Shown in pieces: positions 3,107 to 50,878 of a stretch of 64,000 bases of DNA. This DNA comes from Botryllus schlosseri (lineage: Eukaryota): positions 11,284,001 to 11,348,000 of the forward strand of contig CM119371.1 of NCBI GenBank assembly GCA_051294905.1, read 5' to 3'. Position 1 is the first letter of the stretch; each line of letters starts with the position of its first letter. The position numbers and the translations under genes were made by a program. The notes beneath the pieces were generated by a model that saw only the letters and a list, made by a program, of their open reading frames with translations, was not told where the DNA came from and ran no database searches.

Positions 3107-3362
3107 TTAACAGGTCCCGTACAGGACGTTTTTCTTGAGAGAGCCGTCTGAGGATGCAACAGTATTCTCGGCGAACGTGTAGTTTGTTTCTGTCGCTGCT
3201 AGATTAGCATCATTTGCCTCGAGTTTCTTTCCTGAAATACAAGTGTTTCCATGTGGATTCAGCACGCCATCTGTTTGTTTTTGAGATCCACCCATATCGT
3301 ATATCTCATTTTCTTTCACCTCTGCGTCAGCGCGTACACTGCTCTCTTCATTACGACGGTTC
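3107..3362 (-). CDS. Gene A terminal exon: cytoplasmic tail of mucin-stalk type I receptor (RNRRNEESSVRADAEVKENEIYDMGG...TETNYTFAEN...NVLYGTC*)
   Basis: Acceptor ttgttaag|G, phase 2 matches TM exon 7887-7989; homologous to tails at 25751-26009 and 42264-42483. Confidence 0.85.
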
Positions 3363-4338: not shown

Positions 4339-5870
4339 CTCTAGCTAGATACTCCAACAATAGAAAATATACCATCGAAGTTGCCAGTAATCATGGTTTC
4401 AACTTTGCGCTACAAGACTTAATCTTCTCATCGTCCCGTTCACTGTAACGCCTGGTGTTGGATTTGCGTTCTAATCCAGTAGAATGATATAAAAAGACTT
4501 CTTATGCATTCAAAAGTTTCGCTCTGTGGTACAAGGCGATGGTAGCCCAGCACCAAACTCGCGCCTATCAATCAACCAACCAGCATATGAAATCATGTTA
4601 CGTCTCTGTCTATAGGATAATTCAGACATCAATCGTTTAGGGCGTTAGGCTTATAGTCCCCCGGGTATAACATATGGTTACAGCAGTAGTCAATCGTTGA
4701 ACTCTCCGTGACATTCAAAAACTTTCACCCATGACGACGAAATGACTGGATTTAAATGTTTTAACATGAGAATTTAACATTATTTTGATAAATTTGGAAA
4801 TATATGAGTTTGGTTTCCCGCTAGTATGGGCCTATCTGTATGCACCCACTATTATTGTTGTGGTATGGATTTACAATACATTGGCGCTCGGCCTCTAATG
4901 GTCATTCGCACTAGACCTACATGTATGCGATATATCGTACTTATGTACTACACATAGAATCTTCTGATTCTAAGGAAAACTTCACACCTCTGGATCAAAT
5001 CGACACTGGTGATGACTTCAGATCTATTTACCTCACCACTGCGATGGTAGAGAGGTTGAAGAACTTGGCCGGATCAAGTATGTTTCGGGCCAAGACACTT
5101 AATAGCGACGGAATCGAACCATATGATATTTACGACTGACACAGCGTGTTATATTATTCAGAATTATTGGAAATCAGTACAAATTCTGGCACGTTCACTC
5201 ATATTAAAGATTTTTTTTTCATGCTACCAATATGATTAGATGGGTAATATAAAGTGGAAATTCAAGTAATTTGTAATAAAATTGTTAATGTGAGGCAGAC
5301 ATTGAATATTTCATAAAAGTTTTCACAGAGTTATACCAAGAAATGTTAATTGTTGAACATCCACATCTGAATTTCCAATGTTAGCATACGGAACGAGAAG
5401 AGGAGCTAATGTTGGCACCATATCTTAGCTGCAGTTGGTGGCTGATCACCGCAGTAATACCCAGTAGGCAGATTGCTTGAAACGGCCTGATTTACCGTTA
5501 TGCACCCAACTTAGAATAATCTTTAAATGATCACCATCATCCATGATGTGCAGGCTACAACATACGTATATTGTCATATACCTATGAGATGTGCAAATAC
5601 TTATGAGCGAGAGCTAGCCTTCGTGACATTATGGAGGCATTTTCCATCTACGAGGTCGCATATACCAGGAAATTGCGTAGTAATACTATATAGGTACATT
5701 TAATACTAAGATCATCGGACATTTTGCTCCACTAAATACTGTTATCCGATAGCTTATATCCGAGTTATTGAAACGAGGCTTCTCCTATTTCAATAGCGGT
5801 AGCATGTAGGTTTCATGGGAATAGGAAGATCAATTATGTTAATCAGCATTGATTGCTTCCATCTATCACG

Positions 5871-6832
5871 GGGGAGATGTGGTACCGATGGATCAAAAAT
5901 TGGAAAATGATCGCTGGCCCCAAAATGTTCAGCCGAAAACAACAGGTCTTTTGCTGGCTCAGCACTTTGATACAAGCTCTACCTATCGCGCACATATACA
6001 TGAATATCCGTCTTTTCAAAAAATATTTATGGACGTTCAAAATTTGTTGCTCGAAAGTGTCATCGGTCCCCACCCGGTGGGTCCAATGGCACACGACCCG
6101 GGGACCTATGACACATATACCCTAAATACCTCAGATGTGACAACTTTTCTTGCTCAATATTATAATCTAAGCTACAGTAAGCCAAAGAAGAATGTTTGAT
6201 CGCAACCGTCAAGAAATAGAATAAATATTAACTCAAATGTTGTCATAAAATCACGTTTCGATTTAGGCTCGGACTTATAAATTTGAGGGTGCATACATAT
6301 TGTGCGAAAATCGACAGTGTGACTTCCAAACACCTCGTTATAGCGATAAAACATCATATGCAATTATTACATAAAGATTTTCTGCACGTAGGCACGTTTC
6401 ATTTGTTTTATGATTAGTATGCTTGATTATATTGCTTGATTTGGCTATTGTATCATTGGTCCCCACCCTACGAATTTTATACATGAATCGAAAAAAATTC
6501 CACTCAAGGAAAGTACTGAAAAAAATAATAGGTGCCATTATATAGCCTGATACAAGCCCTACACTTCACAATAAAAATGATTGCTGGTTTGTTCGTGTTG
6601 AAGGTTACAAAGAAAAATGTATATGTCGATATAAATTTACTTTACACCCCCCAAAACAAAAAACATCTGTGAGAGACCCCATAGCTCGCGCACGTCGAAT
6701 TTTTTTGTATGTGAGGAAAGATTTTGCCGGCAAGCAATTGTGGACAAGTTCATGGAAGGTAATCATGGAATTATCATAGAGAATTTTCAAAGTATTTTCG
6801 GTCCCAGTGATCCATCGGTACCACATCTCCCC
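5871..6832. mobile_element. MITE with 25-bp perfect TIRs, superfamily unassigned
   Basis: GGGGAGATGTGGTACCGATGGATCA at 5871-5895 and its exact reverse complement at 6808-6832; no clean TSD. Confidence 0.8.
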
Positions 6833-7886
6833 TAACACGATGGCATTTCAAACATGAATTTATTGCAAATAGAAAGAATTTCAAAATGGCAGGCTTTGAA
6901 ACATCGTCATTGTCTAATTATTTCCTATGCGTATAGCGATTATACCACTAAATTGATGTAGGCCTATGCCTTGCCTCTTGTAGCGTTTACGAAAGTGGTG
7001 GCCTACGTCTCGCTTTGTCGATTTTGACAAATTCAAAGTATGCGAAATTAATGAATGCTTGATTTAATATTGTAATCATGAAAATTTTGTATTATTAGTT
7101 CATTCATTATGAAAAAAGAACATAGGATGAATTTCAAGTATTTTTGAAAATAAAAATTACTTGGAACTCGCTTCGGTTAGAAAATATTCCATTGAAATTT
7201 GACCCATCTTTCTCTAGGAGCATGGTTGACACGATCAGTATATAGCTATACCCTGCATGTATTGCAGCAATTTATTACTCTTTGTAGGTAAGATATATAT
7301 TCACTTAGTGGTGCTTTTCTTATCACAGGTTTTTGCACCAAGGCAAATTGGCCATTATAAAGTCAACGATTCAAGGATGTGTTATGTATCGCTCTTTTGC
7401 AGTGAAGATGACAAGCATTCAAGTATATGTTGGAAATTTCTCTCTCATACAGCAAGTGGTATCATTATCTTTGGCCTTGCGTTTCGGTTACCGTAGACTA
7501 GTAATCAATGATTGCCGCCTGTCGCAATTCTTTCAATCCAAATTCTAATACATATTTTTTCAGCAGCATAATGGTTCGAAATGTGACCAGATTTATTCGG
7601 AAGTATTGAATGGAAGTACCCCAACGATATTCCTAAAGTTACCTTACTGTGCCATATAAACCAAAGTAACATTTGAAACGGAATGGGGAAATTTTGAGTG
7701 GAAAATTTTGTGCTTATCGACATTGTCATGAGTAAAGCCGCGACATTTCTCCTAACAAATGTGATCGTCCAAAGAATCGTCAGCGAAACGTTAAGGGGTC
7801 CCAGTCATGACGAACTGAAAGTCTTGACAGGGCATATTGAAGCATGATTTATGTAATCATAGTAACTCCCCGCATTTGAAACTTAC

Positions 7887-7989
7887 CTGAACAAAAATAT
7901 TATCAAGACTGTTAATACAATTAGCACCAGCAGACTGGAGGTAGCAGCAATGATCACGATGCCTTCGTCAAAAACCGTCACATCCTTAC
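7887..7989 (-). CDS. Gene A transmembrane exon (G-KDVTVFDEGIVIIAATSSLLVLIVLTVLIIFLFR)
   Basis: aatag|GT acceptor, AG|gtaagt donor, 103 nt, phase 1-2; about 23 hydrophobic residues followed by a basic residue. Confidence 0.9.
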
Positions 7990-10104: not shown

Positions 10105-10239
10105 CATCGCTAGTCCTAATGATACTTGTAGATTCCCAATCGCCTGTCGTGGTTATTATGCTTTGTGCTGATGTAGGAGAAGAGGATGTGAAAGATGTTG
10201 CCGTAGTCGTAGCGACAGGTGTGGTAGAATAAACGTTAC
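10105..10239 (-). CDS. Gene A mucin-like exon (G-NVYSTTPVATTTATSFTSSSPTSAQSIITTTGDWESTSIIRTSD-G)
   Basis: tttacag|GT acceptor, G|gtaatg donor, 135 nt, phase 1-1; homologous to 29890-30060 and 48470-48586. Confidence 0.85.
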
Positions 10240-24325: not shown

Positions 24326-25750
24326 AAATCGTGAATTTCGTCGAATAACTCCGCAGCGTTGGGTGACACTTGGGTAGACGACACATCGCGGCAAAACATT
24401 TTAACTTCCATCCCATTCCGATTGGACGAAAACGAGTAAAATGCACCAATTTGTACGGCTATGAATCCCAGGGCGGTAGTATACTTTTTTTTAAAATAAC
24501 TACCTCAATAATGCTGAGTATAAGGCCTTACATTACAACAGTATTGATGTTGCGGATAGCGTAGACCTACGCACGCTGCTCACCATCATCGACCGCATTA
24601 TTGCGTCATTGTTACCTAAACAAGTTATAAACTTTCCATCGCTGATGTCGGACAAATCCTGTCGTGAATTCAAACGAATTTGTGTAACATAAACCTCGTT
24701 ACATTTTGATCATGAAGCCATGTTGTTAGTAGCGACTTCTACTTGTCCTGCCTCTTGGCTATAGTACCCAACACAGCACATTTGGATACGAACGAGAATT
24801 TTTTTTAATTATTTTCTTGCAAGAAATTCAACAATAATGACGCACATACTAAAATATCGCTCTGATGTCGTCACGAGCCTAGGTAACCTACAAAACTTCA
24901 GTCGACCACGGTCGCACTCGAGCCTGCACGTTCGCTCATTGTTGCACCAAATCGGACTGGATTCCTGCATGCCCCACTAACGGCTGGCAAAGTCTTGGAA
25001 GAACGGATTTATTTCCAATTCTCAGAGATACATAGTAACAAACTGTCGAATTTCGCGCATCAATAAAAATAATAACTGATAACTGATAATACCGAATTCG
25101 GGTTCATTAATTATTGCGAGAACGGGAACGTGCCCTGCGGCCATTATGGGCTTAAAACAATTCAATTTAGACTTTAGAGGATGAGAACGTGTATTGCTCG
25201 TCTAATCGCGAGAGGGCAAGATGCTTGGCATTTTAAATAGGAAACTCCGCGACCCAACTGTTGGGAAGCACTGTTCTGTGTCAACGCGCACGTGGATCCG
25301 AACCTATGACGTCATGTGACGTCCCATTCCTAATTCCGACCCTATGTTTCCGTAAAGTAATATATTAATTTACGCGGTACATACGGACGACTCCGTCGAC
25401 ATTATGTCACAATGCGGAAGTATACATGCTGACTTTTTAAACGTCACCAAACATATCAACTGGCACAATAGAATACCAATATCTTCTGTCACTTTGCCTA
25501 CGAATTGCAGAGGGCTCGCAACGGAATACAAACTTGCGCCTTACGTTCTAGGCCAGAATGGACAACGTATTCTTGAGTGGTCAGAAAACACTTTTACTTT
25601 GTTGAACATTGTAATCAGTGGCGCTAAACAACGCCATAAAAGCCAGTTTCACCTTCTCAGTAATTCCAATGCTTACATGTCACCAAACACATCGCACCGA
25701 CTGAGAACTCCTATGAGCTTCTGAAATTGCTATTCAATATTCCGCAGCCA

Positions 25751-26009
25751 TTAAAAGTTCTCGTACATGGCATTATCCTCGACAAACCCACCAGGGGATT
25801 GAACACTGTTATCGACAACACTGTAGGTCGTATCTGTCGCTGTTGGATTCCAATTGATTGTTCCAGATTCCTTTCCTGAGCAAGTCACAGTGTTTTCATC
25901 TAAACGAGGAACGCCGGATCCTTGTTTTCGAGATCCATTCCTGTCGTATATCTCGTTTTCTTTTATCTCTTCGTCAGCATGTCTTCTGCTCTCTTTATTG
26001 TGACGATTC
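25751..26009 (-). CDS. Gene B terminal exon: cytoplasmic tail (RNRHNKESRRHADEEIKENEIYDRN...TDTTYSVVDN...NAMYENF*)
   Basis: Acceptor ttgttaag|G, phase 2, in frame with TM exon 28753-28855; paralogous to gene A and C tails. Confidence 0.88.
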
Positions 26010-27053
26010 CTTAACAAAAATGTAACGCTTAATTTTCAAAAATATGCTGTGAAGAGTTGTGGTACAAATGACAATTCTATAGTGGGCGAACATGTTAACT
26101 GGCGGAAGGTGATAATTTCATGATTATCCAGCAGATGGAATGTAAAAGCGACACAATTAGGCTTTCGCCATCCACCTCAATGTCTATACACGTCCGATAT
26201 ACTTGCTAGCTGCTATCATTGATCAACGATCATGGATAACATGTATACCTATTTTGACGTGTTACTGAGCTATATGAATACTGAAAAGCGACGCTGCGTT
26301 AGAGGATGCATATTTCTTCTGCGATGGCGCAAATCCTATGATACTACGCCCCTAGTGGTGATCGGTAATAAGGTCGTCATTATTTGTCATTTGAATAATC
26401 TTCCGTTGATTACATCGATATTGCCTTATCTTTACTGTGTGATTTTATTTCCAACAGCCGGTCATATTGTATGTGGCTTAAATCGACGTTTGTTACTTTG
26501 ATTTCAATAAAGCGATAGTCCGTTACGATAACGCAATAGTCAGTATACGAGTCCACGTAGTCGACTCTGTTTTTCATCAGTATGACCTCAGTATGACTTA
26601 CTGTAGTGCCACTCAATCGGGTTCCCAATTTTAATTCTTATGGGTACCGTACGGAAATGAGGGAAATATGGTTGTGGCCGTCATAAAGCAAATAGTAAAG
26701 AGGTATATCTTACTACAACTCTTTAAATTACTGTTGGAAGTGGGAAAAGCATATTGGCAGGAGCAATTTCCCTAAAAACATCACCGTATTCCACCTGCAG
26801 CTAAATAATTTCACGACGCCATCCAAACTCTCTGTAGCATTGGAAAGATCACTAAAATGAAGGTATCACTGGCTACGAGGCAGTGATATTTAGATTTGGC
26901 TGCCAAAAGTCATTACATTTTTTAGTCATCACCATCAGATTCCGGGCTAATCCGTGGTCAAACGTAGGTCGTGGGTTGATGACGTATTTAGTCACCACCT
27001 TTCAGATCTTGCATTCCGGATACTGTTAATGCTAGGGTGCTGCGAACTATTAC

Positions 27054-27319
27054 CAGAGGTGGTCAGTAACGAAGTACTTCTACTTTTTGAAGTACTTGAA
27101 GTAGATTTTGCCTACTCACACTACTTTTTAAGTAGTTATGATTTTAGACTACTTCTACTTCTACTTGACAGTTTTCAGTTTCGTAGGCAAATATAAGCGT
27201 AGAATGCCTACTTACTTACTTACTTGTGAACCACCACTCCTACTTCTACTTGAGTAGATATTCCGGCGTTACTTCTACTTCTACTTGAGTAGCGACGGTG
27301 ACTACTTTGACCACCTCTG
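27054..27319. mobile_element. hAT MITE with (CTACTT)n arrays
   Basis: TIR CAGAGGTGGTCA / TGACCACCTCTG; perfect TSD ACTATTAC. Confidence 0.92.
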
Positions 27320-28752
27320 ACTATTACCCTTTCCGGGAGTGACGCGAGGTCAGTAATGTTAATAACCACTGACTATATAGTTAATTTATTCACCCAAACC
27401 TCACATGCCCTGAGCTTGAGGGGCTTAGTAGAGGGACACTCAAGACACACACCCGACTCATACGTCAGACATCCCTGATTCGAAGTTAATACACATTATA
27501 ATAATGTTCAAATGGATTGATATTTTAATTCGTTGATGATGTCCGGCTCATTTACCGCACCAGTATTATGTATTTGATGCGTAATGTGGTAACTTTTTAT
27601 TTTGGTGACTGAGCGATAATTTCGGGTTCGCCAAATGTTTGCAGATTAGCGTAATCATTTTCCCCGTTAGTAAATGGTAGGAACTGGTGCTATAGTTACA
27701 TTTATTTGTACAATTGTGACGCATTTTGCGTTATCAAATACTGTGTTTCAGTAGCTTATATCCGAGTCATACCAAAGGATTTAATCATTTCAATAGCAGT
27801 GGAATGCACGCTTCGGCCCAATTATGCGGGCACATGATATTCAGCATGAATATTTGAATGTAATATCACACGAAAACTAGTGATTCATGAGATGCATGTA
27901 TTCATTGTGGATAATTAATTGAGGGATGTTCCAAAACATGGCCATTACATACGGACACGAACAGCTACTTATTTCATTATTGATATATGCTCTGTCTGTT
28001 CCATCACTTACGAAGTTGGCTGTACTTTTGTAGACCACAGGGCCGACGAAAAAATATGTTCATTCAGTCGGAAAAAGAATCTTACGTCAAAAACCAGTGT
28101 AAGTTCGTAGCTGATTGTTCTGGAGAGAAGCATCACATCACCAAAATGCGTACGGTACGTCACATAGGTCACCGAAATCGCACAAAATTGTTCAGTTTCA
28201 CAAAATTCCGATGTCTTTCAAAGCCCATTTCAATACTGGAATAGTTCGAAGGAATATGCAAATGAACGAATGAGATTGTGGCTCGACTTTATTGAAGAAG
28301 GGAGGTTTGTAATTACCGTAACCATAGAAATTGGGATGTCGATATATTCTTGTCGCATTATGACATCTTTCTCGCATACCGCAGGTGGTACAGATATCGC
28401 CGGGTGCGGGCTACGGTTAGTGTGTGGACTGCGAATCAACGATTGGTGGATTGCGTAATTGATTCAATCTCGTTTTTAATGTATTTTTAGGTGTTGAATA
28501 GAATTCCCTCAGCGATATTCCTTTGCGATAGCTATACATATTTTACCAGTTAAATATAAGTGAGATTTGAGCGGCGATATCTCTTCATGGTCAAAGTCTG
28601 TGAGTAAAGTCATTTGTCCTAACAGATATAATCGTATGAAGGTTGGTTAGCATAGCGTCATAGGGGCCTACTAATGGCGAGGTATGTTTCTTTGCGGAGC
28701 ATGATAATCCGCTATTTTTATTATCATAATACGATACGCAGTCGAAACTTAC

Positions 28753-28855
28753 CTTGTAAAACATATTATGAAGACCGCTAATAAAATCAGCGCTAGCAGA
28801 CTTGACATAGCCGCAATGATTACAATGTATTTGTCATCAAGCTGCGGGTCCGTAC
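28753..28855 (-). CDS. Gene B transmembrane exon (G-TDPQLDDKYIVIIAAMSSLLALILLAVFIICFTR)
   Basis: aaaag|GT acceptor, AG|gtaagt donor, 103 nt, phase 1-2. Confidence 0.9.
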
Positions 28856-28921
28856 CTTTTACTGGAATGAACAAGGGTTCAATTACCGTCAAGTACATTT
28901 TTAATTTACAAGGTACAGTAA

Positions 28922-29112
28922 NNNNNNNNNNNNNNNNNNNNNNNNNNNNNNNNNNNNNNNNNNNNNNNNNNNNNNNNNNNNNNNNNNNNNNNNNNNNNNN
29001 NNNNNNNNNNNNNNNNNNNNNNNNNNNNNNNNNNNNNNNNNNNNNNNNNNNNNNNNNNNNNNNNNNNNNNNNNNNNNNNNNNNNNNNNNNNNNNNNNNNN
29101 NNNNNNNNNNNN
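28922..29112. other. Assembly gap (191 N) in the gene B intron between mucin and TM exons
   Basis: Run of N. Confidence 1.
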
Positions 29113-29310
29113 TGCCTGCGCCATCGCAATACGGTCATCCAGTCTGCACCTCGTTTCTTTTCTCCTCCATGCTATCCGTGGATACTGAACGCCTAGCAGG
29201 ATAGCTGCTCATACCAGTTTTCGAGTGTTTAATCTGACCCGGCCGGGGTACGAACCCATGCCCTACCGATTAAATATCCGGACACATCATCATATTAGGC
29301 TAGCTCGCTA
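29113..29310 (-). mobile_element. tRNA-derived SINE head, family 3, running into the gap
   Basis: Minus strand: degenerate A box TAGCCTAATATG, B box GGGTTCGTACCCC, then GGTCAGATTAAACACTCGAAAACTGGTA. Confidence 0.55.
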
Positions 29311-29769
29311 TAATGCTAGCATTTCAGGTGTTATTTCGAGGATCGTGACAATATCGTAGGGTAGGGCAAGGGGAGCATGCGATTTTAATTTCCCGAATGA
29401 CGTCACAATAGTGTATTCCGGCGTGAAAATGTGACTTCGTTGTGGTCGCAGACAGTTTATTTGGGGTATAGACATTAGGCATGGTTAACAATGCTTACGT
29501 ATTTCTAATTATTCACTATTGCCCGCTGCCATGGAGTGGTGCGCTGTTAATAGCAACAAGGCTTGATACCCCATGGTATTTCACTGTGAGCGATATCGAG
29601 TGATATCTTTCGAATGACTCCGGCCGTACTCTAATTAATAGCAATTTTATGCAGGCAGAGACGCAGACAGAAAGGCAGAAACTAATGTGTGTTTTAAATG
29701 ACAATACGACGTCATACTTTCGTGAAGCAGAACGTTGTAGGCCAGCGGCTCGGACCATCTCTACTATAT

Positions 29770-31170
29770 AGGCATGTTCATTGCTCCCAGTAACGAACAT
29801 TTTTCTAGTGACATTGTGACGAGATATCATGGTGAGAATTATGGTCTTATGTGGACCTGGTCAATCGTGTAATATTAAGCTCTATTTACCAATAGTAGTA
29901 CTCCCAATAATGTGCGTATAAACTGTAGATTCCCATTCACTAGTCGTGTTTATTATGCCTTGTGCTGTCGTAGGAGTTGCTGTCGTAGTCGTAGTGGTAG
30001 GTAGTGCAGTAGTAGTAGTAGTAGTTGTTGTAGTAGTAGGAGGAGGAGGATCGTTGTTACCTGCCATAAATAAGGTAAGTGTAATGTCGTCAAAAATGTT
30101 TGCGAGGATAGTATATTGTTTACATGGATTTCCGCATCCGTCAATATTGGAACGGGGAGAAATTTATTCACAATCCTTTCAAACTGAACTCTCTCGTCCT
30201 CGCTTGTATTAAATCGAGTCACTGCTATTTTATAACGAGTGTTAGTAACTGAAATAAAATACATTGGTACCTATAGATGTCGAGGACATGGAATGCACTG
30301 CACATGTATTAGTTCATTTTATGTGATTGCATATAAAGTTAGACGCGGGTTCGACTATCTATATGAGTAAACATGAAGATATAGCGGTGTCAAATAAACC
30401 TAAGATACCCGACGATATAATTCGAGGTACCAAGAACTTCATTCCAATGACACGATATCAAAAAGCATATGCACCGATTTTGAATCAGTGATTCGTGTTG
30501 CTCATCCCTGCATGAATTCAATGACGTGTGGTCAGGATAACCAAAGGAACGTTATGGAGACCTTCAATGATTATATTGACAATGCCGATTTGTATTTTCT
30601 ATCGATGTTTTTGAATAACTAAATGTTCAATGTTATTACACCCGAAATTGCGGAATTTGCATGTACAAGTTCAAAAATATACAAAGACCGCGTGGAGACA
30701 CAGATTAATCTGCCTCACTGGTTGTTGGCTAAGTATGTGACTATCGCAGCGCAGGCGACACAAGACAGGGCTAAGGAATTCGTGAACCGATGGTTTAGAA
30801 TGAATCGTTAGCTGCCAATTTCAACATGCAATGCAGAGCAAGTATTTTCAATCACTAGCTACCTTCAGTTGTGGATACGCATAGTAGCTTTCATATAGTC
30901 TGCGTTTGATGAATGCTAATGCGATAAGAAACAGGCCACCAAGTGAATCAACTACGATTAATGGTTCATAAACTGACTTTAATTGGGTCAGTGTCTCGCC
31001 ACTCATGAACTTCGCCGCATGTCACTTCGTGACACATTCCATTTTGCGATTGTTCATCGTTTCTTTGGCCACATGCATTCAATGAAATACGATGCACAAG
31101 AATGCGACACAAACCACAGAGACCTGCCTAACGATGGCATATTTTCGTATGAATACAATATGGCGATGCG
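29770..31170. repeat. Segmental paralogy B/C: mucin exon and flanking introns, homologous to ~48350-49960
   Basis: Collinear blocks alignable by eye, e.g. AGTTAGACGCGGG, CTGCCTCACTG, GATAAGAAACAGGCC, CGCATGTCACTTCGTGA, AGAGACCTGCCTAA. Confidence 0.85.
29890..30060 (-). CDS. Gene B mucin-like exon (G-NNDPPPPTTTTTTTTTTALPTTTTTTATPTTAQGIINTTSEWESTVYTHIIGSTTI-G)
   Basis: tttatggcag|GT acceptor, G|gtaaat donor, 171 nt, phase 1-1; N-T-T sequon. Confidence 0.88.
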
Positions 31171-31275
31171 ACATAATTAACGGTAGATTGACGGTAAATC
31201 TCCTAATCCCTGGGTAAGCATTGACAGAAATGGTCTGATAAAATGGAAAAGTTGTTCTAGGTAAATACAATATAG

Positions 31276-32294
31276 CAGGGGTGGGCAAACTACGGCCCGC
31301 GGGCCGCATGCGGCCCGTAACACCGTTCTGTGCGGCCCGCGAGAGTCTAAATTTTTTTTAAATATTGATAAAATGCGTACTAAAAATCTAATCAATGCAG
31401 TGACTTGATTAACTTTTCTTAGTATATTTCACCATGATAATTCTAAGACAGTGGTTCTGAAAGGGGGCGCGAAGCTGAGCTCAACAGAAAAATTCTTTAG
31501 AGCCTCGCGCGATTTACATCCAATTCATAAGAGTTATTGCTCTGTATTTAGTCTGAATTACATGTTGAAAAACCTCTCATCCACAGTCGTAACCTTCCAT
31601 GCCAACAAACTACCCGTTAGGTTTGCATAGCATCCTGGTTGCGTTTTGTGATATGACAATAAGGGGGTGCGAAATCTTTCACCATCACAAGGGGGGGGGG
31701 GAGTGTCTTAAAAAGTTTGAGAACCACTGATCTGAGTTAAATACTTAATATCACAGCGGGATAGCTGCAATAACATTGACATAATTTGGATCACCAGTGG
31801 GATTTCAGATTGGCCACTACATTTTTAATTATTTCAGTGATGTGCTTATAAAAAACGATTCGAGCGTGTCTTAGGTAGATTCTTTGTCTGTATGTATAGA
31901 ATGGGGGTATATATATTTTATCTAAACATAGTATAAGCTGACATGGTCATGATGCTGTCATCATTGTGTGTCCCGGAACTGAACCAAAAGTGGAATTAGT
32001 AAATCTATGAACAGATCGCTTCTCACAGATTTAAATTTCAATCCTGTTCTAAGAATCGGGCAAATTGGATATTGAGGACCGCCAGCCTATGAAATCTCGC
32101 CACTATATATGTTTCTGACGCATGCACGATATCGTCAAGCAATGTTTGGCTTGACACATATCTCCATGTTCTCACTATATAATCAAATATCAATATTGCG
32201 TTTTGGTTTATAATCCCAATTTTATTTAGTGCGGCCCGAGAATGGATTCGGATGTTGAATGCAGCCCGCGAGCTCAAAAGTTTGCCCACCCCTG
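31276..32294. mobile_element. Non-autonomous hAT, inverted copy of 11821-12701, with nested MITE at 31449-31729
   Basis: CAGGGGTGGGCAA / TTGCCCACCCCTG TIRs; TSD CAATATAG/CATTATAG (7/8). Confidence 0.9.
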
Positions 32295-32674
32295 CATTAT
32301 AGTCATTGAAGCGAGTTCCGTCAGCAAAATCCGTATCTGAAAGCAGAGTCAAAACAAAGACGATATAGGTGCGAAAATTATAATACCATAAATATTTGTT
32401 GCATGGTCAGTCCCGGAATTGCTCATCACATCACACATCACATCTTATGCTGTGCTCCAAATACAGAGCCGCTTATTAAACGATATAACACCATAATTTC
32501 TACGAATTGAATCGCAATATCGTCGGAGCAATATCCCTTCTGTGCCCCATTGATAGCAGGTGGTTTCAAAAAATAAACACATTTTGAGTCATACCTCAAA
32601 CATTCCGGATGTATACAATTTTACAATTTGCTGAATATGAAGATTAAGACGGATTGCTCGGATGTATCATTACA

Positions 32675-33115
32675 TAGGCTTACCATACGTCCTCTTCTAA
32701 GAGGATTTGTCCTCATTTTTGACTTTTTTGAAACTGTCCTCGGAGGACGCCCTTTTGTCCTCTTTTTTGAGATTTTGTCCTCTTTTTTGAAAATTTTGGT
32801 CAGATTTAGATCAAATTGCGAGCGATATGCGGCAAATTAGCTGAGAAGTGACGCTCCGGCGGGTATTTCGGAGGGAAAAGCGGTGATTTTAGCTCTGAGC
32901 GAAAAGAAGACCTTTTTTTTAGTCATCCACTTGGCAATGTGGAGTGATAAACGTTATTTTGAGCTGTGAGCGAAAGTGACAATCTTTTTTTTTTAGTCAA
33001 CCGATCACGGAGTGGGAAAAATTTACCGGTTTTTGAGAATTCTTCTCCAGTTTTGCATGTCTGAAATTTCTGAAAAAGTGTCATCTTTTTACATTTCCAA
33101 AATATGGTATGCCTA
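32675..33115. mobile_element. hAT MITE (TAGGCTTACC family) with an internal duplication
   Basis: Perfect TSD TCATTACA; the GATTTTAGCTCTGAGCGAAA..TTTTTTAGTCA segment occurs twice. Confidence 0.9.
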
Positions 33116-33765
33116 TCATTACAGCACAGCGGCACAAAATACCAATACTTACCGGAACTGCTGCGGAACATTTTTGCTGAAGGTGTTAACGCGATCAGGC
33201 AACTAAATCTTTACAATTCTTTTTCTAGACTGCCATCGAACATTTAGTTGGTGACAAGTTGCGTATTGTATATCATTCGTATATCGTTCTGGTGAATAAA
33301 AAAACATCGTTTCAGTTAAAAAGCCACCAGTTACATCGGAATTTCCGATATATTATGGTAATAGACTGACATACATTATGAAAATAGATTTTTCGGTTAA
33401 TGTTCTTATATACTATATGCGACTATTTTCATCAGACTCCTTCCGCTATTCGGAAAATGAGCAAATCTCTTCATATACTGTTCAATAACATTGCCAGTCA
33501 ACGCATCCTGCGTATTGCGTATATCCTTTGTAAGTCACTGGTTCCCAAACTTATTCGTCTCGTTGACACCTTCGCCCGATATTTGAGTCGAACTTCCTAA
33601 TATGGAGCAACTCCGGGACTATAAAGCAACTGTTGACTAAAAAATAGGGGGCACCGCTTGAGGCAAAAAACAGGAGCGAATACGCTGTCTCGAGAAATTA
33701 CAACAAATTGAGATGGTTCAGTACATTACCCATCTACACACCCACTAGAATATAATCGTATAAAC

Positions 33766-35051
33766 CAGGGGTTCTCAACCTGGGGGGCGCGAGAAATTGA
33801 CGAAGTCAGTATAGGGGGGGGGGCGCGAGAAATTGACAAAGTCAGTATAAATTGTACGTGTCTAAACATGTGTTTAACATCCATTATGAGAAGACGATTA
33901 ATGAAGATGAAATTTATTCCATATTCAAGAAAGCTTGCTACTCTAGCAACCACGCTCAACGGAGTATCGTCTGATTTCAACTTCATTTGAGCAAATTTTT
34001 GAAATTCTTTATAGATATAGAGAGCAATTCCCACGTGTAAGTCATTCATTGCTTCATAGCTTTGACAGTAGCCTAAAGCTTGTCGCGCTGGGCAGCTGTT
34101 GTTAGTAGCTTGCGAACTGCACTGCAAGACAGACTTAGATGCAACATAGGTTGCCCTGTTTCGCCCTCAATTAGGCTATAAATCAACACAATTTAATTAA
34201 TTTCCAAAACTGATCAAATTTAGCCTGGCAGGACAGAACGACGCCTTGCTCTCTGTACTCACTACCAGCATAAGGATTAGTCTCAGGGTGACCTACCTTG
34301 AAATTAATTAATGGATGTCTTGTTCAATGTTTTATTGTTATTTTCAAACAAGTTTGGAGAAATTTGTCAGCAATGTAAAAGACTCAACAACTGGAATGCA
34401 GATTCAAAATTGGTGTAAGATATACCTTATGTATACTATTAGATCAGGGGTGGGCAGCCTCCGGTCGTAGAAGGGAATTTGAGCGGCCGTCGACGCCTAA
34501 TTCAATTAGTATGTGTGGGCGGCCGTAGACATGGGAATTGCAATTACGAATTCACTTCCGCATTTTCGAGAGATTTTAATTATCGAATGTGACGATATTT
34601 TAATTAATCTTGAAATTTTCTTCGCCCTCCGCGCAATTCAACAAGAACTCATTTTTCGATTTTAATGCAGCGCCCTTCTTAATCTGAGCCGCTCCGCGCG
34701 ACAATATGCACCTCCCGGCAACTATTCATAACATTGGCACTCGCTACTTCGGTGCGCACAATAGGCCATTGTGAAAAGTAGAATAGTCCGGAGTTCACCG
34801 GGAATGGATATGGACAGTTTACCATAGGAATTTTGCGTCCAGATCGCTCATTGTGGCTATGCCCTGGAATGCGGCCTTACGCTACATAAGCAATCGAAAT
34901 GCGGCCATGATTATCAAAAACGTTGCCCACCTCTGTATCAGATAATGTGCTCTTTTTGACATGACGGTAAATGCAAGGGGGGTCAGGGGGGCGCGATTTT
35001 TTTGACCATGTCCAAGGGGGGCGCGTGTCAAAAAAAGGTTGAGAACCACTG
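33766..35051. mobile_element. Non-autonomous hAT (CAGGGGTTCTCAACC TIR)
   Basis: Perfect TSD GTATAAAC; empty site in gene C paralogous region at ~51090-51105. Confidence 0.9.
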
Positions 35052-36330
35052 GTATAAACTATATACTTTCGATTCAAATAATATAAGAGGGTTGGTAGTG
35101 AGTCGTCTAAGAAACAGAGACGCATTGCTGTTAGAACAATCTACTGCACATTAACGCAATCTGTGATCATCTCGTTCGTGGTCAATTTACATGTGATGTG
35201 ATCAATGAAACGTACGATCCGCGTATGAATGGTTTCTCTCACAACTCACACCTGCGAGTCGTTAACAATCCAACCATAAAAAGGATACAGTGATTTAATC
35301 GGCACCGTTTTTTTGATGATTTCAAAAGCGCCGAGTCAAATCAAGTCAAGTCATAGCTCGTGTCATCCCCAAACTGTTTGACATACTGCTGCCTGAATAT
35401 TACACGTATGAATAGGAGATGGCACATCACTTTCCGGTGTGGCGACATTGCGCTAAACACGGCATATCAAATCACTAGGTTTGCTTGCGACGATTTTAAG
35501 TTGATTCGTTCAAGGCAGGTTTTTCATAATGGGAAAGAGGTGAACACTTTTACTGTTAGGTCCAAGTTGTGATGGATTCGGCATGACTTTTTACCGCTGA
35601 GGATCGATTTGCATGATCGGTGTCATGAACTGCATAACATCGTCACACTTTTAGGTTAGCACACCTGAGCTATATTTCTAAACTTCAGATAGATTTGTAT
35701 GATAACGGAAGATTTCTAATCGCATTTAAAGACACTTCTAGCTAGAAATCGACCTTAAGTAATACTTATTAAAAGGAATAATCACGATTCAGCGTAAAAA
35801 TTGCAAAATTCCCTCAAATGGAAAATTCCACCCCGTTGAGAACAACTTCCATAAGCAAAGAACAATGTCATACATGAAATTAGTCTATGATCGTCTACGA
35901 CAGCTCGTCTAAGCTTCACTTCTGAACGGCCAGTCACCTGCTCTTGCAGGAAAGAATAATGTCAGCTTTTAGGTAGTCAACTTTCACGTAGCCTACGCCA
36001 TTTTTACTGAGTCACTACCGAAAATGCTAGGAGTTGGAACATTCTATTGGCGTAGTGTAGCACTTCCGATTAAAACTGACATCAACTATTACTAAGTGAC
36101 GCTGATCCATGTAAAATTCTCTTTACCTCGTAGTAGTTCGCTCGATGACGAAATTGCATTGGACAAGGAAGTAACCAATCATAAATGAGTGAATGGCATC
36201 ACTTATATGCATACACGACGTCATATATCATATTCCATGTAAAAGAGTGCAATTTCTTTGTATAAATGCATAGATAACACATATCAAATACATTTCTGAC
36301 ATTGCGATATATGTTTTACTTTACGATACA
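35052..36330. repeat. Segmental paralogy B/C: intron-1 block homologous to ~51100-53230
   Basis: Shared runs such as GAGTCGTCTAAGAAACAGAGA, TTTGCTTGCGACGATTT, ATGCTAGGAGTTG, GCACTTCCGATTAAAACTGACATCAAC. Confidence 0.85.
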
Positions 36331-42263: not shown

Positions 42264-42483
42264 TTATCTGTCAACGACCTCGTAGGTATCACCACCGGCT
42301 TGTGCAGAATTGGAAGTCATATCGATCCCAGATTCATACGCATTTTTTTCTTCGAGTTTCGCTCCAGAACATATCCCGTCGTTGTCGTACGATGATTGCT
42401 TTCGCGATTCATCCAATTCGTAAATTTCGTATTCGTTCACCTCTGAGTGAACATGTAAGCTGCCGTCTTTTCTACGTCCATTT
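42264..42483 (-). CDS. Gene C terminal exon: cytoplasmic tail (RNGRRKDGSLHVHSEVNEYEIYELDESRKQSSYDND..ICSG..NAYESG..GGDTYEVVDR*)
   Basis: cttttaag|A phase-2 acceptor in frame with TM exon 43534-43636; aligns with the A and B tails. Confidence 0.87.
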
Positions 42484-43533: not shown

Positions 43534-43636
43534 CTAATGTATTTGATTATGAATACTCCAATGAAAATCAGCAGCAGGCAGCTTGCCGCTGATGCAATGA
43601 TTGCAATAATAGTTGCGAGACTTTCAGACTCCATGC
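43534..43636 (-). CDS. Gene C transmembrane exon (G-MESESLATIIAIIASAASCLLLIFIGVFIIKYIR)
   Basis: catttcag|GC acceptor, AG|gtgagt donor, 103 nt, phase 1-2, same length as in A and B. Confidence 0.9.
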
Positions 43637-45004: not shown

Positions 45005-45148
45005 CTACTCCCGTACTTTGACTGGTACCTGTAGATTCAAATTGGCCCGCCGTTGTTATCTTGCCCAATGGTGTGGATACATACATAGTATCGGTAGTTG
45101 TGGCGGTGGTGGCTGACGCCGCTGCAGTAGTACTGGTCTCCGTGCTGT
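45005..45148 (-). CDS. Gene C mucin-like exon (D-STETSTTAAASATTATTTDTMYVSTPLGKITTAGQFESTGTSQSTGV-G)
   Basis: cttgtgatag|AC acceptor, G|gtatga donor, 144 nt, phase 1-1. Confidence 0.8.
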
Positions 45149-46847: not shown

Positions 46848-46988
46848 TAATTCCCGTACTTTGGATTGTACCTGTGGATTCAAGTTGGCCCGCCGTTGGT
46901 CTCATGCCAAATGGTGTGGATACATACATATTATCAGTGGTGGTGACGGTGGTGGTTGCAGCAGCAGTAGTACTGGTCTCCGCGATGT
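46848..46988 (-). CDS. Gene C mucin-like exon, duplicate (D-IAETSTTAAATTTVTTTDNMYVSTPFGMRPTAGQLESTGTIQSTGI-)
   Basis: cttgtgatag|AC acceptor, A|gtatgg donor, 141 nt, phase 1-1; the indel versus the sister exon is in frame. Confidence 0.78.
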
Positions 46989-47830: not shown

Positions 47831-48469
47831 AATTTTTCTCAACTAAATCAATTCCTGTGTTGTGTTGTTTCGCTTCGCAATCCATTTCTCCGTTCTGTTC
47901 TTATGCTTAATTGAATGATAAGATATTTACAATGTGACTGTGCGATTGGATGGTGCATCTATAGTTACATTCGTTTACATGGTAAATCGTGCAAATTGAT
48001 GCTCAGTTTCAGGTAAGTTTGAGGTTCAAGGATGTATGCAATATGAAAATGGAGTCCTGAACTTGGAATAATATCTACAGTGCGGTTTTGCATCACCCCA
48101 AACCACAGTGGATGCTGAGAACCAGACATATATGGCATTTTAGTAGGATATGTAAAATCGCGGATTTCAAATCTTAGGGGAATCCCTCCTTTTCAGTCGA
48201 TATTCCTCCAACTCAACATGCACACAGATGCAATGGATGGGTCACAGAAAAAAAGTAGATAGAATACGTTTTTAAGGCATAAAGCACGGGAAACGGACTG
48301 AAAACCATGACGTTTTTAAAGTCGGTCAATTCTGAACAACCCTAATGCTCATGTTCATTGCACATTGTAACGAAGATATTTGTAGTGACATTACGACGAG
48401 ATGTCGTAGTAATAGGTATTATGGTATTATGTCGGCCTGGTAACTCGGGTAATATTAAGTTATAATTAC

Positions 48470-48586
48470 CATCAGTAGTACTCCTGTTAATGTGCATAGA
48501 TTTCCATTCATCAGTCGTGTTTATTGTGCCTTGTGCTGTCGTAGTCGTAGTGGGACGTAGGGTAGGAGGAGGAGGATCCGTGTTAC
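48470..48586 (-). CDS. Gene C mucin-like exon (G-NTDPPPPTLRPTTTTTAQGTINTTDEWKSMHINRSTTD-G)
   Basis: ttagcag|GT acceptor, G|gtaatt donor, 117 nt, phase 1-1; direct homologue of 29890-30060. Confidence 0.85.
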
Positions 48587-50439
48587 CTGCTAATCAATTA
48601 GGTGTAATAATATCGTCAAAAAAAGTTTCCAAGAGTGGTATATTAATTATATGGATGTCCGCACTTGTCGATATTGTAATGGGAGGGAATTTAATCACAA
48701 TCCTTTCAATTTGAACTCTCACGTCCTTGCTTATGTAAAATCGGATCACTACTGTACTTTATAATAATTTCATTAACAGAAATAAAATATATTAGTAGCC
48801 TACCCATGTCTCAAATGAGAGAATAAATTACTCTGCTTACTTATCACTCAATTTTATGTGATAGCATATAAAATATAATCAAGTTAGACGCGGGGCTGGC
48901 TATCTATATGAGTAAACATGGAGATATAACGGTGTCGACCAAGCCTAAGATGCCCGACGATATATTACGAGGCTCTCAAAATTGAATTATTCCTCTTCAT
49001 TCCCTTAAGATTTTCTTACTCAATATTGGACAGACTTGACTTGGTTTGAAATGCCTTATTCCAATCACACGACATCATAAAGCATATGAACCGATTTTAA
49101 ATCAGTGATTTATGCTGCTCATGGATGAGTAAAAGAAAATCATGAAAACCTAAAATGATTATAATAACAATAAACATTGTTAATTTCGGTAGATTTTCAT
49201 GAATGAATATATTTTTAACATTATTACAGCCAAAATCGCGGGATTTGCATATTTAAAGTTAAAAATATGTAGAGCTGAATGAATCCGAAATTATAAGACG
49301 CTCATAATTTATGATAACTGGCATCATCGAGTGCTACTTTTTGCACTGATCCAAAAAAATATCGATGATGTCAGAGCAGCAGAACCACATGCCAAATCGT
49401 CCAAGACCTTGTAATTGCTACGTACAAAGACCGCGTATAGAGACACAATAACTGACCGGACACATATTACTCTGCCTCACTGATTGTTGGCTAACTGTAC
49501 GACTATCGCGGCGCAGTGAGACACAATCCAGCGCCATCGAATTCGTGTATCGATGATTAGGGATGAATCGCGTTGTTGCGAATTCCAACATGTAGCGCAG
49601 AGCAAGTGCATTCCCCTACTAATGTAGACGTTAATGTATTTTGAATCACTAACTACCTACAATTGTGGGTATTTATAGTAGCTTCTTACACAGCCTGCGT
49701 GTAAACAGTACTGATGTGATAAGAAACAGGCCTCCAACTGCATCAGCTACGATTTAGGGTTCATAAATTTATAAATATGATTCTAATCGGGTCTGTACCT
49801 CACCAATCATGAACCACACCGCATGTCACTTCGTGAATCATACGATTTCGCGAATGTTGGCCGCTTCTTTAGCCACGTTATTTCAATGAAATCCATTGCA
49901 CAAGATTGCGTCACTAACGATAGAGACCTGCCTAATTTGATGGCAAATTTTCGTAAGAATACAATATGCCAGTAACATCGGAATTTACGACATATTATGG
50001 TAATAGAATGATGTAGCCTACATTATCGGAATAGTATTTTCGGTTGGTGTTCTTAAATACTATAAGCGGCCATTTTCATCAGGCGCCATATGAAGCAGTT
50101 CGGGGACCATAAAGCACCTGTTGACTAAATCATAGGGGGCACCACGGATTTAGGCCTCAGGACAGAGATACTAAAATTATTTCGATTAGGGTTCAGCTGA
50201 TCATTTCCGTCTCAAATATATAGTATTAGATATCAGTTTTGAGATCAAGTAACTACCTTCGAGTCACTAATCATGTCGAGTCAAGTCAATCAAGTTTCGA
50301 AGGTGACTCGAGGCAAGTCAAGTCACTGGTTTTTGGAGGTGACACGAGTCAACTCAAATCGAGTCAAGTCATGAGTAAAGACACAATTCAAGTAATATCG
50401 AATTTTCGAAGTATATGAATGATGATTCACAGTCATTAC

Positions 50440-50878
50440 TAGGACAAGTTTTTGTTGCAGTTAAATCCTAGGAAAGTTGCATTAATTATTGAAAAAAGTT
50501 GCAGAAGTTGCATTTTGACCACATTTTGCTCGGTTGACCAAAAAAAAGGTCAACTTTCCAGATTCACTAAAAAAAACGGTCAATTTTCCGGCTCAGCTTC
50601 CGAAATACGAAAAAGCTTTACTTCGGTGCTGGTTTACGGTGTTTCAGTCGAATTTGGCCGTGTATTTCACCAAAATCGAAAATACTTTCATGAAAAATCG
50701 AAACAGTTGCAAAATGTTGCAAAAAGTTTCATGAAAAAAATGGACAAAAGTTGCAAAAAGTTGCACTATTAGATTCCTTCAACCAGCTTGAAACAGCATT
50801 CTACATATCTTACGAGTGTTTAGGAAGCTACCGGAAGCTGTAAAAAGAAGTTGCAAAAGTTGCAAAAAACTTGCCCTA
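50440..50878. mobile_element. hAT MITE (TAGGACAAG / CTTGCCCTA termini, AGTTGCA arrays)
   Basis: TIR-like ends; TSD GTCATTAC/GTAATTAC (7/8). Confidence 0.75.

What the first reader, a model, noticed from the sequence alone, without database searches (positions are those of the whole stretch)
25751..26009. Paralogue-specific gain and loss of SH2-docking motifs: ITSM in B, terminal YxxV in C, degenerate in A
Seen at the homologous position: B T-T-Y-S-V-V (exact ITSM consensus TxYxx[VI]) plus a terminal YENF (YxN); C D-T-Y-E-V-V three residues from the C-terminus plus YDND (YxN); A T-N-Y-T-F-A (no hydrophobic +3) and VLYGTC. No charged residue lies within any TM core. Established: ITIM/ITSM motifs recruit SHP-type phosphatases and YxN recruits Grb2. 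Inference: a paired-receptor-like set with similar ectodomains and different signalling output.
Basis: partly seen in the sequence, partly recalled or inferred. Interest (0 to 1): 0.7.

Follow-up and report, generated by a model that had tools for sequence, protein, structure and literature searches.

The report
Tyrosine-motif tails, mucin-stalk membrane family
This stretch is the last exon of one gene in a large, apparently undescribed sea-squirt family of small membrane proteins with a sugar-rich stalk and a tyrosine-rich inner tail.

Summary
All quoted motifs are in the sequence at the stated places, on the minus strand. They lie in the last exons of three tandem genes, A, B and C. Each gene has Thr/Pro-rich stalk exon(s), one TM exon and one tail exon, all with canonical, phase-compatible splice sites.

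The genome holds about 40 such tail exons: 20 on C1 between 10.84 and 13.11 Mb, and 20 on small contigs.

Across the family three elements are conserved:
- a proximal Φ-K-E-N-x-[IL]-Y-[ED];
- a central T-Y-[ST]-Φ-A;
- a C-terminal K-E-N-[IV]-L-Y-G.

How A, B and C compare with this:
- **A** carries the majority state, which is under purifying selection in close relatives. It is not degenerate.
- **B** is derived: Ala to Val at +3 gives TxYxxV, and LYGT became MYENF.
- **C's YEVV is not homologous to B's motif.** C lost the central Tyr (TAC to TCC). A frameshift cut off the old end, whose relic is still visible after the stop, and a new terminal YEVV arose 9 codons downstream. Four relatives share it.

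I found no Ig, sushi or other head exon, no charged TM residue and no RNA reads on B. The tails are probably phosphotyrosine-docking or sorting tails. A paired-receptor reading is not supported.

The parts
25751..26009 (-). Gene B, last exon: 86-codon cytoplasmic tail plus stop. It starts with the third base of the split Arg codon. It carries E-N-E-I-Y-D, T-T-Y-S-V-V and the terminal N-A-M-Y-E-N-F.
28753..28861 (-). Gene B, TM exon of 109 nt, phase 1 to phase 2, with cag| acceptor and AG|gtaagt donor. The TM core has no charged residue, and a Cys lies at its cytosolic end. An alternative acceptor lies 6 nt downstream.
29890..30060 (-). Gene B, Thr/Pro-rich mucin-like stalk exon of 171 nt, phase 1-1. 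It ends in T-T-S-E-W-E-S-T... An N gap at 28922-29112 lies between this exon and the TM exon.
3107..3362 (-). Gene A, last exon: 85-codon tail plus stop. It carries E-N-E-I-Y-D, T-N-Y-T-F-A and the terminal N-V-L-Y-G-T-C.
7887..7989 (-). Gene A, TM exon of 103 nt, phase 1 to phase 2.
10105..10239 (-). Gene A, mucin-like stalk exon of 135 nt, phase 1-1. It ends in T-T-G-D-W-E-S-T...
42264..42483 (-). Gene C, last exon: 73-codon tail plus stop. It carries E-Y-E-I-Y-E-L, Y-D-N-D, A-Y-E-S and the terminal T-Y-E-V-V-D-R. Just after the stop, in another frame, lies the relic N-I-H-F-G-T-C-stop of the ancestral end.
43534..43636 (-). Gene C, TM exon of 103 nt, phase 1 to phase 2.
45005..45148 (-). 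Mucin-like stalk exon of 144 nt, phase 1-1, upstream of C's TM exon. It is 77% identical in protein to the next one.
46848..46988 (-). Mucin-like stalk exon of 141 nt, phase 1-1, a tandem duplicate of the 45-kb exon.
48470..48586 (-). Mucin-like stalk exon of 117 nt, phase 1-1, homologous to B's stalk exon. It probably belongs to C. It lies at the 3' end of a 4.9-kb block (48350-53200) that is 67-79% identical to B's upstream region 29773-36296.

Best explanation
**What the stretch is.** 25751-26009 is the cytoplasmic-tail exon of gene B. B is one of three tandem members here of a lineage-restricted multigene family with about 40 tail exons in this genome, evolving by birth and death.

**The protein.** Each gene encodes a small single-pass membrane protein with one to three Thr/Pro-rich (probably O-glycosylated) stalk exons, a TM helix and a 72-88-residue acidic tail. 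The tail is probably disordered. The conserved tail elements are tyrosine motifs:
- a proximal Φ-K-E-N-x-[IL]-Y-[ED];
- a central T-Y-[ST]-Φ-A-[DE];
- a C-terminal K-E-N-[IV]-L-Y-G.

**Inferred mechanism.** The tyrosines sit in acidic contexts with Ile/Leu at -1. They would be phosphorylated by cytosolic tyrosine kinases and then dock SH2 or PTB proteins, so the protein acts as a membrane-anchored scaffold. Subfamilies differ in their distal docking sites.

**How A, B and C differ.**
- A keeps the ancestral set.
- In B, the central motif changed from Ala to Val at +3, which gives a TxYxxV / YSxV site. Its end changed from LYGT to MYENF, which gives a YxN site.
- C's subfamily lost the central Tyr. 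A frameshift cut off the old end, and a new C-terminal YE[VF]V evolved.

**Shown versus inferred.** Shown: gene anatomy, homology of positions, subfamily conservation and purifying selection. Inferred: phosphorylation, the identity of any partner and any difference in signalling output.
For: **Anatomy.**
- All stalk, TM and tail exons have canonical AG|..|GT boundaries and matching phases in A, B and C.
- The same TM and stalk exons occur in four further paralogues.

**Family.** The own-genome searches found 20 tail exons on C1 between 10.84 and 13.11 Mb, and 20 on C17, C18, C21, C33 and C45.

**Conservation.** Alignments show the three tyrosine elements across the tail types.

**Selection.**
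- dN/dS is 0.17-0.28 for three close paralogues, and 0.03-0.20 in their distal tails.
- It is 0.56 for A against B.
- It is 0.30 for B against its broken copies before their nonsense codon, and 0.68 after it.

**History of C.**
- One search shows TAC to TCC at the central Tyr. It also shows a 4-nt gap before the stop.
- The relic N-I-[HR]-F-G-T-[CR]-stop lies after the stop in C, L051 and L054.
- The terminal YE[VF]V is shared by C and L051-L054.

**Machinery.**
- An SH2-SH2-phosphatase gene lies at C14:7.275-7.282 Mb.
- Src, Syk, SHP-1, Grb2 and PLC-γ homologues are reported in Botryllus (PMC12582321).
Against: - No read from four bulk RNA-seq runs lay on any B exon.
- The profile search of 1.84 billion proteins found no annotated or transcript-derived full-length protein. 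It found only three genomic ORF fragments from one other sample.
- I found no 5' exon, start codon or signal peptide, so the gene models are incomplete.
- Many copies are broken.
- dN/dS in C's subfamily is 0.4-1.0.
- The motif matches are individually close to chance.
- YxxΦ and NxxY can also be sorting signals.
- Nothing here shows phosphorylation or binding.
Confidence: 0.55

Rival explanations
1. A, B and C form a paired-receptor-like set. B would be inhibitory or switch-type, with an ITSM recruiting SHP or SAP and a YxN recruiting Grb2. C would signal through a terminal YxxV and a YxN. A would be a degenerate, signalling-poor member. Similar ectodomains would see the same ligand.
For: - B matches TxYxxV exactly and ends in YENF.
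- TxYxx[VI] arises in only 2.5% of shuffles of B's tail.
- B and C share a homologous stalk exon and upstream block but have very different tails.
- An SHP-type gene is present.
- Botryllus FcoR receptors are reported to use ITIM/hemITAM logic (PMC12582321).
Against: - A holds the conserved majority state, not a decayed one.
- C's motif is not homologous to B's.
- There is no charged TM residue and no short-tailed activating partner.
- No ligand-binding domain exon was found. Only mucin-like stalks were found.
- B's ITSM is unique to B. A relative from another sample has A-T-Y-S-S-I, with Thr at -1 and not at -2. The ten nearest copies are truncated before the motif.
- With about 15 distinct tails in the family, one chance ITSM match is not rare.
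- YxN is about a 31% chance event, and Y-G-N occurs at the same terminal Tyr in other members.
Confidence: 0.15
2. The tyrosine motifs are trafficking signals, not SH2 docks. NxxY (N-E-I-Y, N-I-L-Y, N-A-M-Y) and YxxΦ (YSVV, YENF, YEVV) would bind clathrin adaptors or PTB-type sorting proteins. They would set the endocytosis or recycling rate of a mucin-like surface glycoprotein. Subfamilies would then differ in residence time, not in signalling.
For: - Both family-wide motifs have Asn at -3 from the Tyr.
- B's and C's derived motifs are YxxΦ, and C's lies at the extreme C-terminus.
- Background knowledge: mucin-like proteins such as CD164 and the LDL-receptor family use such signals.
Against: - The majority central motif has Ala at +3, which is not Φ.
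- The terminal motif ends Y-G-T-x, which is not YxxΦ.
- C's subfamily changed the Asn at -3 of the proximal motif to Tyr.
- The strongly acidic surroundings and Ile/Leu at -1 fit kinase substrates at least as well.
Confidence: 0.2
3. B, and perhaps the window's whole trio, is a silent or decaying copy in a birth-and-death array. On this view the B- and C-specific motifs are neutral drift with no function.
For: - There are no RNA reads on B.
- No 5' exon was found.
- At least 20 of about 40 tail exons carry nonsense or frameshift changes.
- dN/dS is 0.56 for A against B and up to 1.0 within C's subfamily.
Against: - The reading frames of A, B and C are intact over 73-86 codons. Their splice sites and TM helices are intact too.
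- All five tyrosines of C's subfamily are invariant in five members that differ at 15-26% of non-synonymous sites.
- There is clear purifying selection in the close trio.
- The RNA sample was small: four runs, 6-13% of reads each. Related receptor families in Botryllus are expressed in a genotype-specific way (PMC12582321).
Confidence: 0.1

Closest known systems
Botryllus fester co-receptors (FcoR; PMC12582321)
   Same: - Probably the same animal group.
- Clustered, fast-diversifying type I membrane genes.
- Tails carry several tyrosine motifs, including simple YxxI/L/V 'core' motifs.
- Motifs are swapped between members, and there is intergenic recombination between ectodomain and tail parts.
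   Different: [quoted passage not shown] Their motifs are of the L-A-Y-A-I-V, E-D-D-V-Y-A-I-L or [AD]VYxxV type, and their clusters lie on chromosomes 5, 9 and 11.
- Here no Ig- or sushi-size exon exists in 64 kb holding three genes. The tail is one exon, the motifs differ and the cluster is on the largest scaffold.
Transmembrane adaptor proteins (LAT, PAG/Cbp, SIT, NTAL)
   Same: - Small single-pass proteins whose main content is a disordered tail with several tyrosine docking sites.
- From memory, LAT has YLVV and YENL-type sites, PAG has a YSSV Csk site, and SIT combines an ITIM with YxN. B's YSVV and YENF resemble these.
   Different: - No sequence homology.
- Those proteins have ectodomains of only a few residues and, mostly, a juxtamembrane CxxC palmitoylation motif.
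- Here there is a stalk of at least 45-57 residues, and at most one Cys at the membrane edge.
Transmembrane mucins and sialomucins (MUC1 tail, CD43, PSGL-1, CD164)
   Same: - Thr/Pro-rich extracellular exons next to the TM segment.
- A cytoplasmic tail with tyrosine motifs. From memory, the MUC1 tail has YEKV and YTNP sites, and CD164 has a C-terminal YxxΦ.
   Different: - No SEA domain.
- No detectable sequence similarity: no Pfam family and no relative outside the clade.
- The stalks here are very short.
SLAM-family ITSM receptors and ITIM receptors
   Same: B's T-T-Y-S-V-V fits the ITSM consensus TxYxx[VI].
   Different: - SLAM-family receptors carry Ig ectodomains and usually two or more ITSMs, conserved among orthologues.
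- Here there is one match in one gene, derived from a T-Y-x-Φ-Ala motif, with no Ig domain.
NPxY / NxxY tails (integrin beta, LDL-receptor family)
   Same: Two spaced NxxY motifs in one short tail, as in integrin beta tails. They could bind PTB-type domains.
   Different: - No Pro at -2.
- The surrounding K-E-N-x-Φ-Y context is peculiar to this family.
- No homology.

Membership tests
ITSM-bearing receptor (SLAM type) | Sequence TxYxx[V/I] in the cytoplasmic tail | tested here: met
   B has T-T-Y-S-V-V. A has Ala at +3, and C has Asp at -2, so neither fits.
ITSM-bearing receptor (SLAM type) | Motif conserved among relatives, usually in more than one copy | tested here: not met
   The motif occurs once, in B only. 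The B-like copies are truncated before it. P0002 has A-T-Y-S-S-I. The family majority is T-Y-x-Φ-A.
ITSM-bearing receptor (SLAM type) | Phosphotyrosine-dependent binding of SAP, EAT-2, SHP-2 or SHIP | not testable with these tools
   Needs peptide binding or cell assays.
Paired activating/inhibitory receptors | Activating member with a charged TM residue and a short tail | tested here: not met
   Seven TM exons were examined, none with a charged core residue, and all have long tails. The only short tails arise from nonsense mutations.
Paired activating/inhibitory receptors | Closely similar ligand-binding ectodomains | tested here: inconclusive
   B and C share one homologous stalk exon (49% protein identity) and an upstream block. 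No ligand-binding domain was found, and the 5' exons are unknown.
Botryllus FcoR family | Three Ig-like domains plus a sushi domain in the ectodomain | tested here: not met
   The minus strand of the window has no phase-compatible exon of 50-160 codons with an Ig- or sushi-like Cys/Trp pattern. Ten long ORFs had no Pfam hit.
Botryllus FcoR family | ITIM, hemITAM, core-1 or paired core-2 motifs in a multi-exon tail | tested here: inconclusive
   B's YSVV and C's YEVV fit the loose core-1 pattern YxxI/L/V. There is no ITIM, hemITAM or [AD]VYxxV pair, and the tail is a single exon (PMC12582321).
Grb2-type YxN docking site | Tyr with Asn at +2 | tested here: met
   B has YENF. C has YDND, which is YD[NS][DN] in its subfamily. 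This is about a 31% chance event per tail.
Transmembrane adaptor proteins (LAT/PAG type) | Very short ectodomain and a juxtamembrane CxxC | tested here: not met
   Stalk exons of 45-57 codons precede the TM segment, and there is at most one Cys at the cytosolic edge.
Transmembrane mucin | Thr/Ser/Pro-rich extracellular region next to the TM segment | tested here: met
   Stalk exons with Thr runs occur in A, B, C and four other paralogues. Glycosylation itself was not tested.

The most novel reading that the evidence does not exclude
The family could be a lineage-specific set of membrane-anchored phosphotyrosine scaffolds. It would do in ascidians the job that LAT-type adaptors do in vertebrates; LAT and SLP-76 homologues are reported missing from ascidian genomes (PMC12582321). 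Subfamilies would wire the same upstream kinase to different effectors, and new docking sites would be made by point changes and by a frameshift that replaced the whole C-terminal motif.
Probability: 0.1. Interest if true: 0.7.

Novelty: new variant of a known kind. Interest (0 to 1): 0.4.

Why it matters
If the tails are real phosphotyrosine docks, the family shows in detail how short signalling motifs are born, moved and lost in a fast-duplicating gene cluster:
- a single Ala-to-Val change creates an ITSM-like site;
- a Tyr-to-Ser change removes one;
- a frameshift swaps the whole C-terminal motif, with the old end still readable in the 3' UTR.

It would also add an unannotated membrane protein family to the signalling toolkit of a colonial chordate used to study self/non-self recognition.

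As it stands it is a well-defined orphan family with a plausible but untested function. It is not evidence for a paired-receptor system.

Tried and rejected
**RNA evidence.** Four bulk RNA-seq runs laid on 25600-31599 gave no read on any B exon. Reads fell only on a repeat at about 27050-27320. This does not prove silence.

**Full-length proteins.**
- A profile of eight tails searched against 1.84 billion proteins found only three genomic ORF fragments from one sample.
- The exact-sequence look-up of B's ORF found nothing.

**Family and fold look-ups.** The three tails and seven long ORFs had no Pfam match. The ESM Atlas gave only chance-level hits.

**Search for a head domain or 5' exon. None of these found a candidate.**
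- A scan for an Ig signature.
- A scan for a signal peptide plus a phase-1 donor.
- A test for codon-position periodicity of substitutions in the B/C shared block.
- A search for ATGs conserved between B and C.
- A scan for phase-compatible exons of 50-160 codons.
- Two tiny ATG mini-exons upstream of the stalk exons of B and C were judged unconvincing.

**Other.**
- The sushi family search of the whole genome scored only 150 of 1067 candidates. It says nothing about this window.
- A plant-type cellulose synthase Pfam search, meant to confirm a tunicate, found nothing and was dropped.
The gene models of most paralogues therefore rest on 3-10 kb.
- No complex prediction was run. Phosphorylation-dependent SH2 binding cannot be judged that way.

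Full report
**1. What is at the coordinates.**
- The window is eukaryotic DNA, about 39% G+C and rich in repeats. It lies at C1:11284001-11348000 of a 495-Mb assembly.
- On the minus strand, 26009-25751 is an open frame of 86 codons preceded by a good acceptor (ttgttaag|G) and ending in a stop.
- It reads through E-N-E-I-Y-D, T-T-Y-S-V-V (25831-25814) and a terminal N-A-M-Y-E-N-F.
- Two paralogous exons lie on the same strand:
  - A at 3362-3107, with T-N-Y-T-F-A and V-L-Y-G-T-C;
  - C at 42483-42264, with Y-D-N-D and D-T-Y-E-V-V-D-R-stop.

**2. Gene anatomy.**
- Upstream of each tail exon lies a TM exon: A 7989-7887, B 28861-28753, C 43636-43534.
- Further upstream lie Thr/Pro-rich stalk exons: A 10239-10105, B 30060-29890, and C 45148-45005, 46988-46848 and 48586-48470.
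- All have canonical AG|..|GT boundaries.
- Stalk exons have lengths divisible by three and are phase 1-1. TM exons go from phase 1 to phase 2. The tail exon supplies the third base of a split Arg codon.
- The TM cores have no charged residue, and basic residues follow them (R-N-R/G-R...). This fits an outside-in orientation, with the stalk outside the cell.
- An N gap (28922-29112) lies between B's stalk and TM exons. I left it alone.

**3. What I could not find.** I found no start codon, signal peptide or globular ectodomain.
- A scan for signal-peptide-like first exons gave nothing convincing.
- B's upstream region (29773-36296) is 67-79% identical to 48350-53200 upstream of C. This block shows no codon-position periodicity of substitutions and no conserved ATG-led frame.
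- A scan of the whole minus strand for phase-compatible exons of 50-160 codons gave no Ig-, sushi- or CUB-like candidate.
- Ten long frames had no Pfam family.
The 5' ends remain open.

**4. The family.**
- Searching the genome with B's tail, with a profile of eight tails and with a divergent relative found 20 tail exons on C1 between 10.84 and 13.11 Mb. Those up to 11.46 Mb are on the minus strand, and those from 12.77 Mb on are on the plus strand.
- Another 20 lie on the small contigs C17, C18, C21, C33 and C45.
- TM and stalk exons were confirmed for four further members.
- A profile search of 1.84 billion proteins found only three ORF fragments, all from genomic contigs of one other sample. 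The one compared with this genome, P0003, is 71-72% identical to its nearest copy here.
- No annotated full-length protein, no Pfam family and no Atlas look-alike exists.
- The family is therefore narrow in range and apparently undescribed. A literature search found nothing like it.

**5. Motifs in family context.** Alignments show three conserved elements:
- a proximal Φ-K-E-N-x-[IL]-Y-[ED];
- a central T-Y-[ST]-Φ-A-[DE];
- a C-terminal K-E-N-[IV]-L-Y-G-x-x-stop.

The first and last resemble each other, and both are NxxY. Four tail types can be told apart:
- **Type 1** holds A, three close paralogues, one more distant member and P0001. It has all three elements.
- **Type 4** is P0003-like, with seven or more loci. 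It has all three elements too, though two members have lost the central Tyr.
- **Type 2** is B. Its central motif has Val in place of Ala at +3, and its end is N-A-M-Y-E-N-F.
- **B's nearest relatives** are ten identical copies on other contigs.
  - All ten carry a CGA-to-TGA nonsense codon after E-I-Y-E-M-N-G-S.
  - All ten also carry a 2-nt deletion just before Y-S-F-V.
  - Read in B's frame, they keep the ancestral K-K-N-I-L-Y-G-N-V end.
- **Type 3** holds C and four intact relatives. These share E-Y-E-I-Y-E-L, Y-D-[NS]-[DN], A-Y-E-S and a terminal [ST]-Y-E-[VF]-V-[ED].

**6. C is not homologous to B at the motif.**
- In the DNA alignment, C's ACT TCC AAT TCT GCA CAA GCC lies opposite ACT TAC ACT TTT GCA CAA GCC of a type-1 gene. 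The central Tyr codon has become Ser. It is Phe or Thr in other type-3 members.
- C's ACC TAC GAG GTC GTT lies nine codons downstream, opposite ACC TCC GGG TCG GTT.
- A 4-nt gap follows, and C stops early.
- Directly after the stop, in another frame, C, L051 and L054 still read N-I-[HR]-F-G-T-[CR]-stop. This is the relic of K-E-N-I-L-Y-G-T-R-stop.
- Type 3 thus arose from a type-1-like tail by three changes: loss of the central Tyr, a frameshift that discarded the old terminal motif, and a Ser-to-Tyr change that made a new terminal YEVV.

**7. Selection.**
- A against B gives 0.56.
- Type 3 gives 0.4-1.0, yet all five of its tyrosines are invariant.
- B against its broken copies gives 0.30 before the nonsense codon and 0.68 after it.
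- At least 20 of the roughly 40 tail exons are broken. This is a birth-and-death pattern.

**8. Chance.** In shuffles of B's tail, TxYxx[VI] appears in 2.5%, the broad ITIM/ITSM pattern in 9%, YxN in 31% and YxxΦ in 38%. With some 15 distinct tails in the family, one exact ITSM is not remarkable. Y-G-N occurs at the same terminal Tyr in two other lineages.

**9. Expression.** Four bulk RNA-seq runs of the same species label, with 6-13% of each read, put no read on any B exon. Only a repeat at about 27050-27320 was covered. This is absence of evidence only.

**10. Context.**
- Earlier notes of this scan call the genome a sea squirt and mention botryllin. I did not verify the species. The assembly has 16 chromosome-size scaffolds, as reported for Botryllus schlosseri (PMC12582321).
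- That paper describes the FF and FcoR receptor families. These have Ig-like and sushi ectodomains, ITIM/hemITAM/core motifs, and clusters on chromosomes 5, 9 and 11. The paper also reports homologues of Src, Syk, SHP-1, Grb2 and PLC-γ, and the absence of LAT and SLP-76 in ascidians.
- I found an SH2-SH2-phosphatase gene at C14:7.275-7.282 Mb.
- The present family fails the FcoR ectodomain test and is a different thing.

**11. Verdict.**
- The paired-receptor reading is not supported.
- The best reading is an orphan family of mucin-stalk membrane proteins with tyrosine-motif tails. These are probably phosphotyrosine scaffolds, with sorting signals as the main rival.
- The subfamilies have rewired their distal motifs by point changes and one frameshift.

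Noticed in passing
window 27050-27320: A short repeat inside B's last intron is the only part of 25600-31599 covered by RNA reads. Coverage is on both strands, with many mismatches and loose ends, so the reads come from many copies elsewhere. It is probably a SINE- or MITE-like element.
   Followed up: no
window 29773-36296 versus 48350-53200: A block of 4.9-6.5 kb upstream of B, including its stalk exon, is duplicated upstream of C at 67-79% identity. The TM and tail exons of B and C are too diverged for blastn. The pattern is mosaic and suggests exchange between genes.
   Followed up: partly
G000 C33:17412, 75702, 136896; C45:22782, 81071; C17:2000151, 2036268, 2915977; C18:687415; C21:332410: Ten identical B-like tail exons share the same nonsense codon and 2-nt deletion. 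They are spaced about 58-61 kb apart on C33 and C45, each with a C-like copy nearby. This is either a recent large tandem duplication or uncollapsed haplotigs.
   Followed up: partly
window 55575-55742: A degenerate stalk-like frame (Thr-rich, ending ...P-G-Q-W-K-S-T) has the wrong phase at its acceptor and a stop before any donor. It is probably a dead exon copy.
   Followed up: partly
window 28922-29112: An assembly gap of 191 N lies between B's stalk exon and TM exon. Further stalk exons of B could be hidden there. I did not fill it.
   Followed up: no
G000 C14:7275483-7281734 (minus strand): Two SH2 hits followed by tyrosine-phosphatase hits on one strand within 7 kb. This is a SHP-1/2-type gene.
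   Followed up: partly
L034 (C1:11203700-11213699, minus strand), positions 5853-6008 and 6601-6876: The paralogue 80 kb downstream on C1 has two tandem stalk exons rich in N-x-S/T sequons in place of Thr runs. Stalk chemistry therefore varies between members.
   Followed up: no
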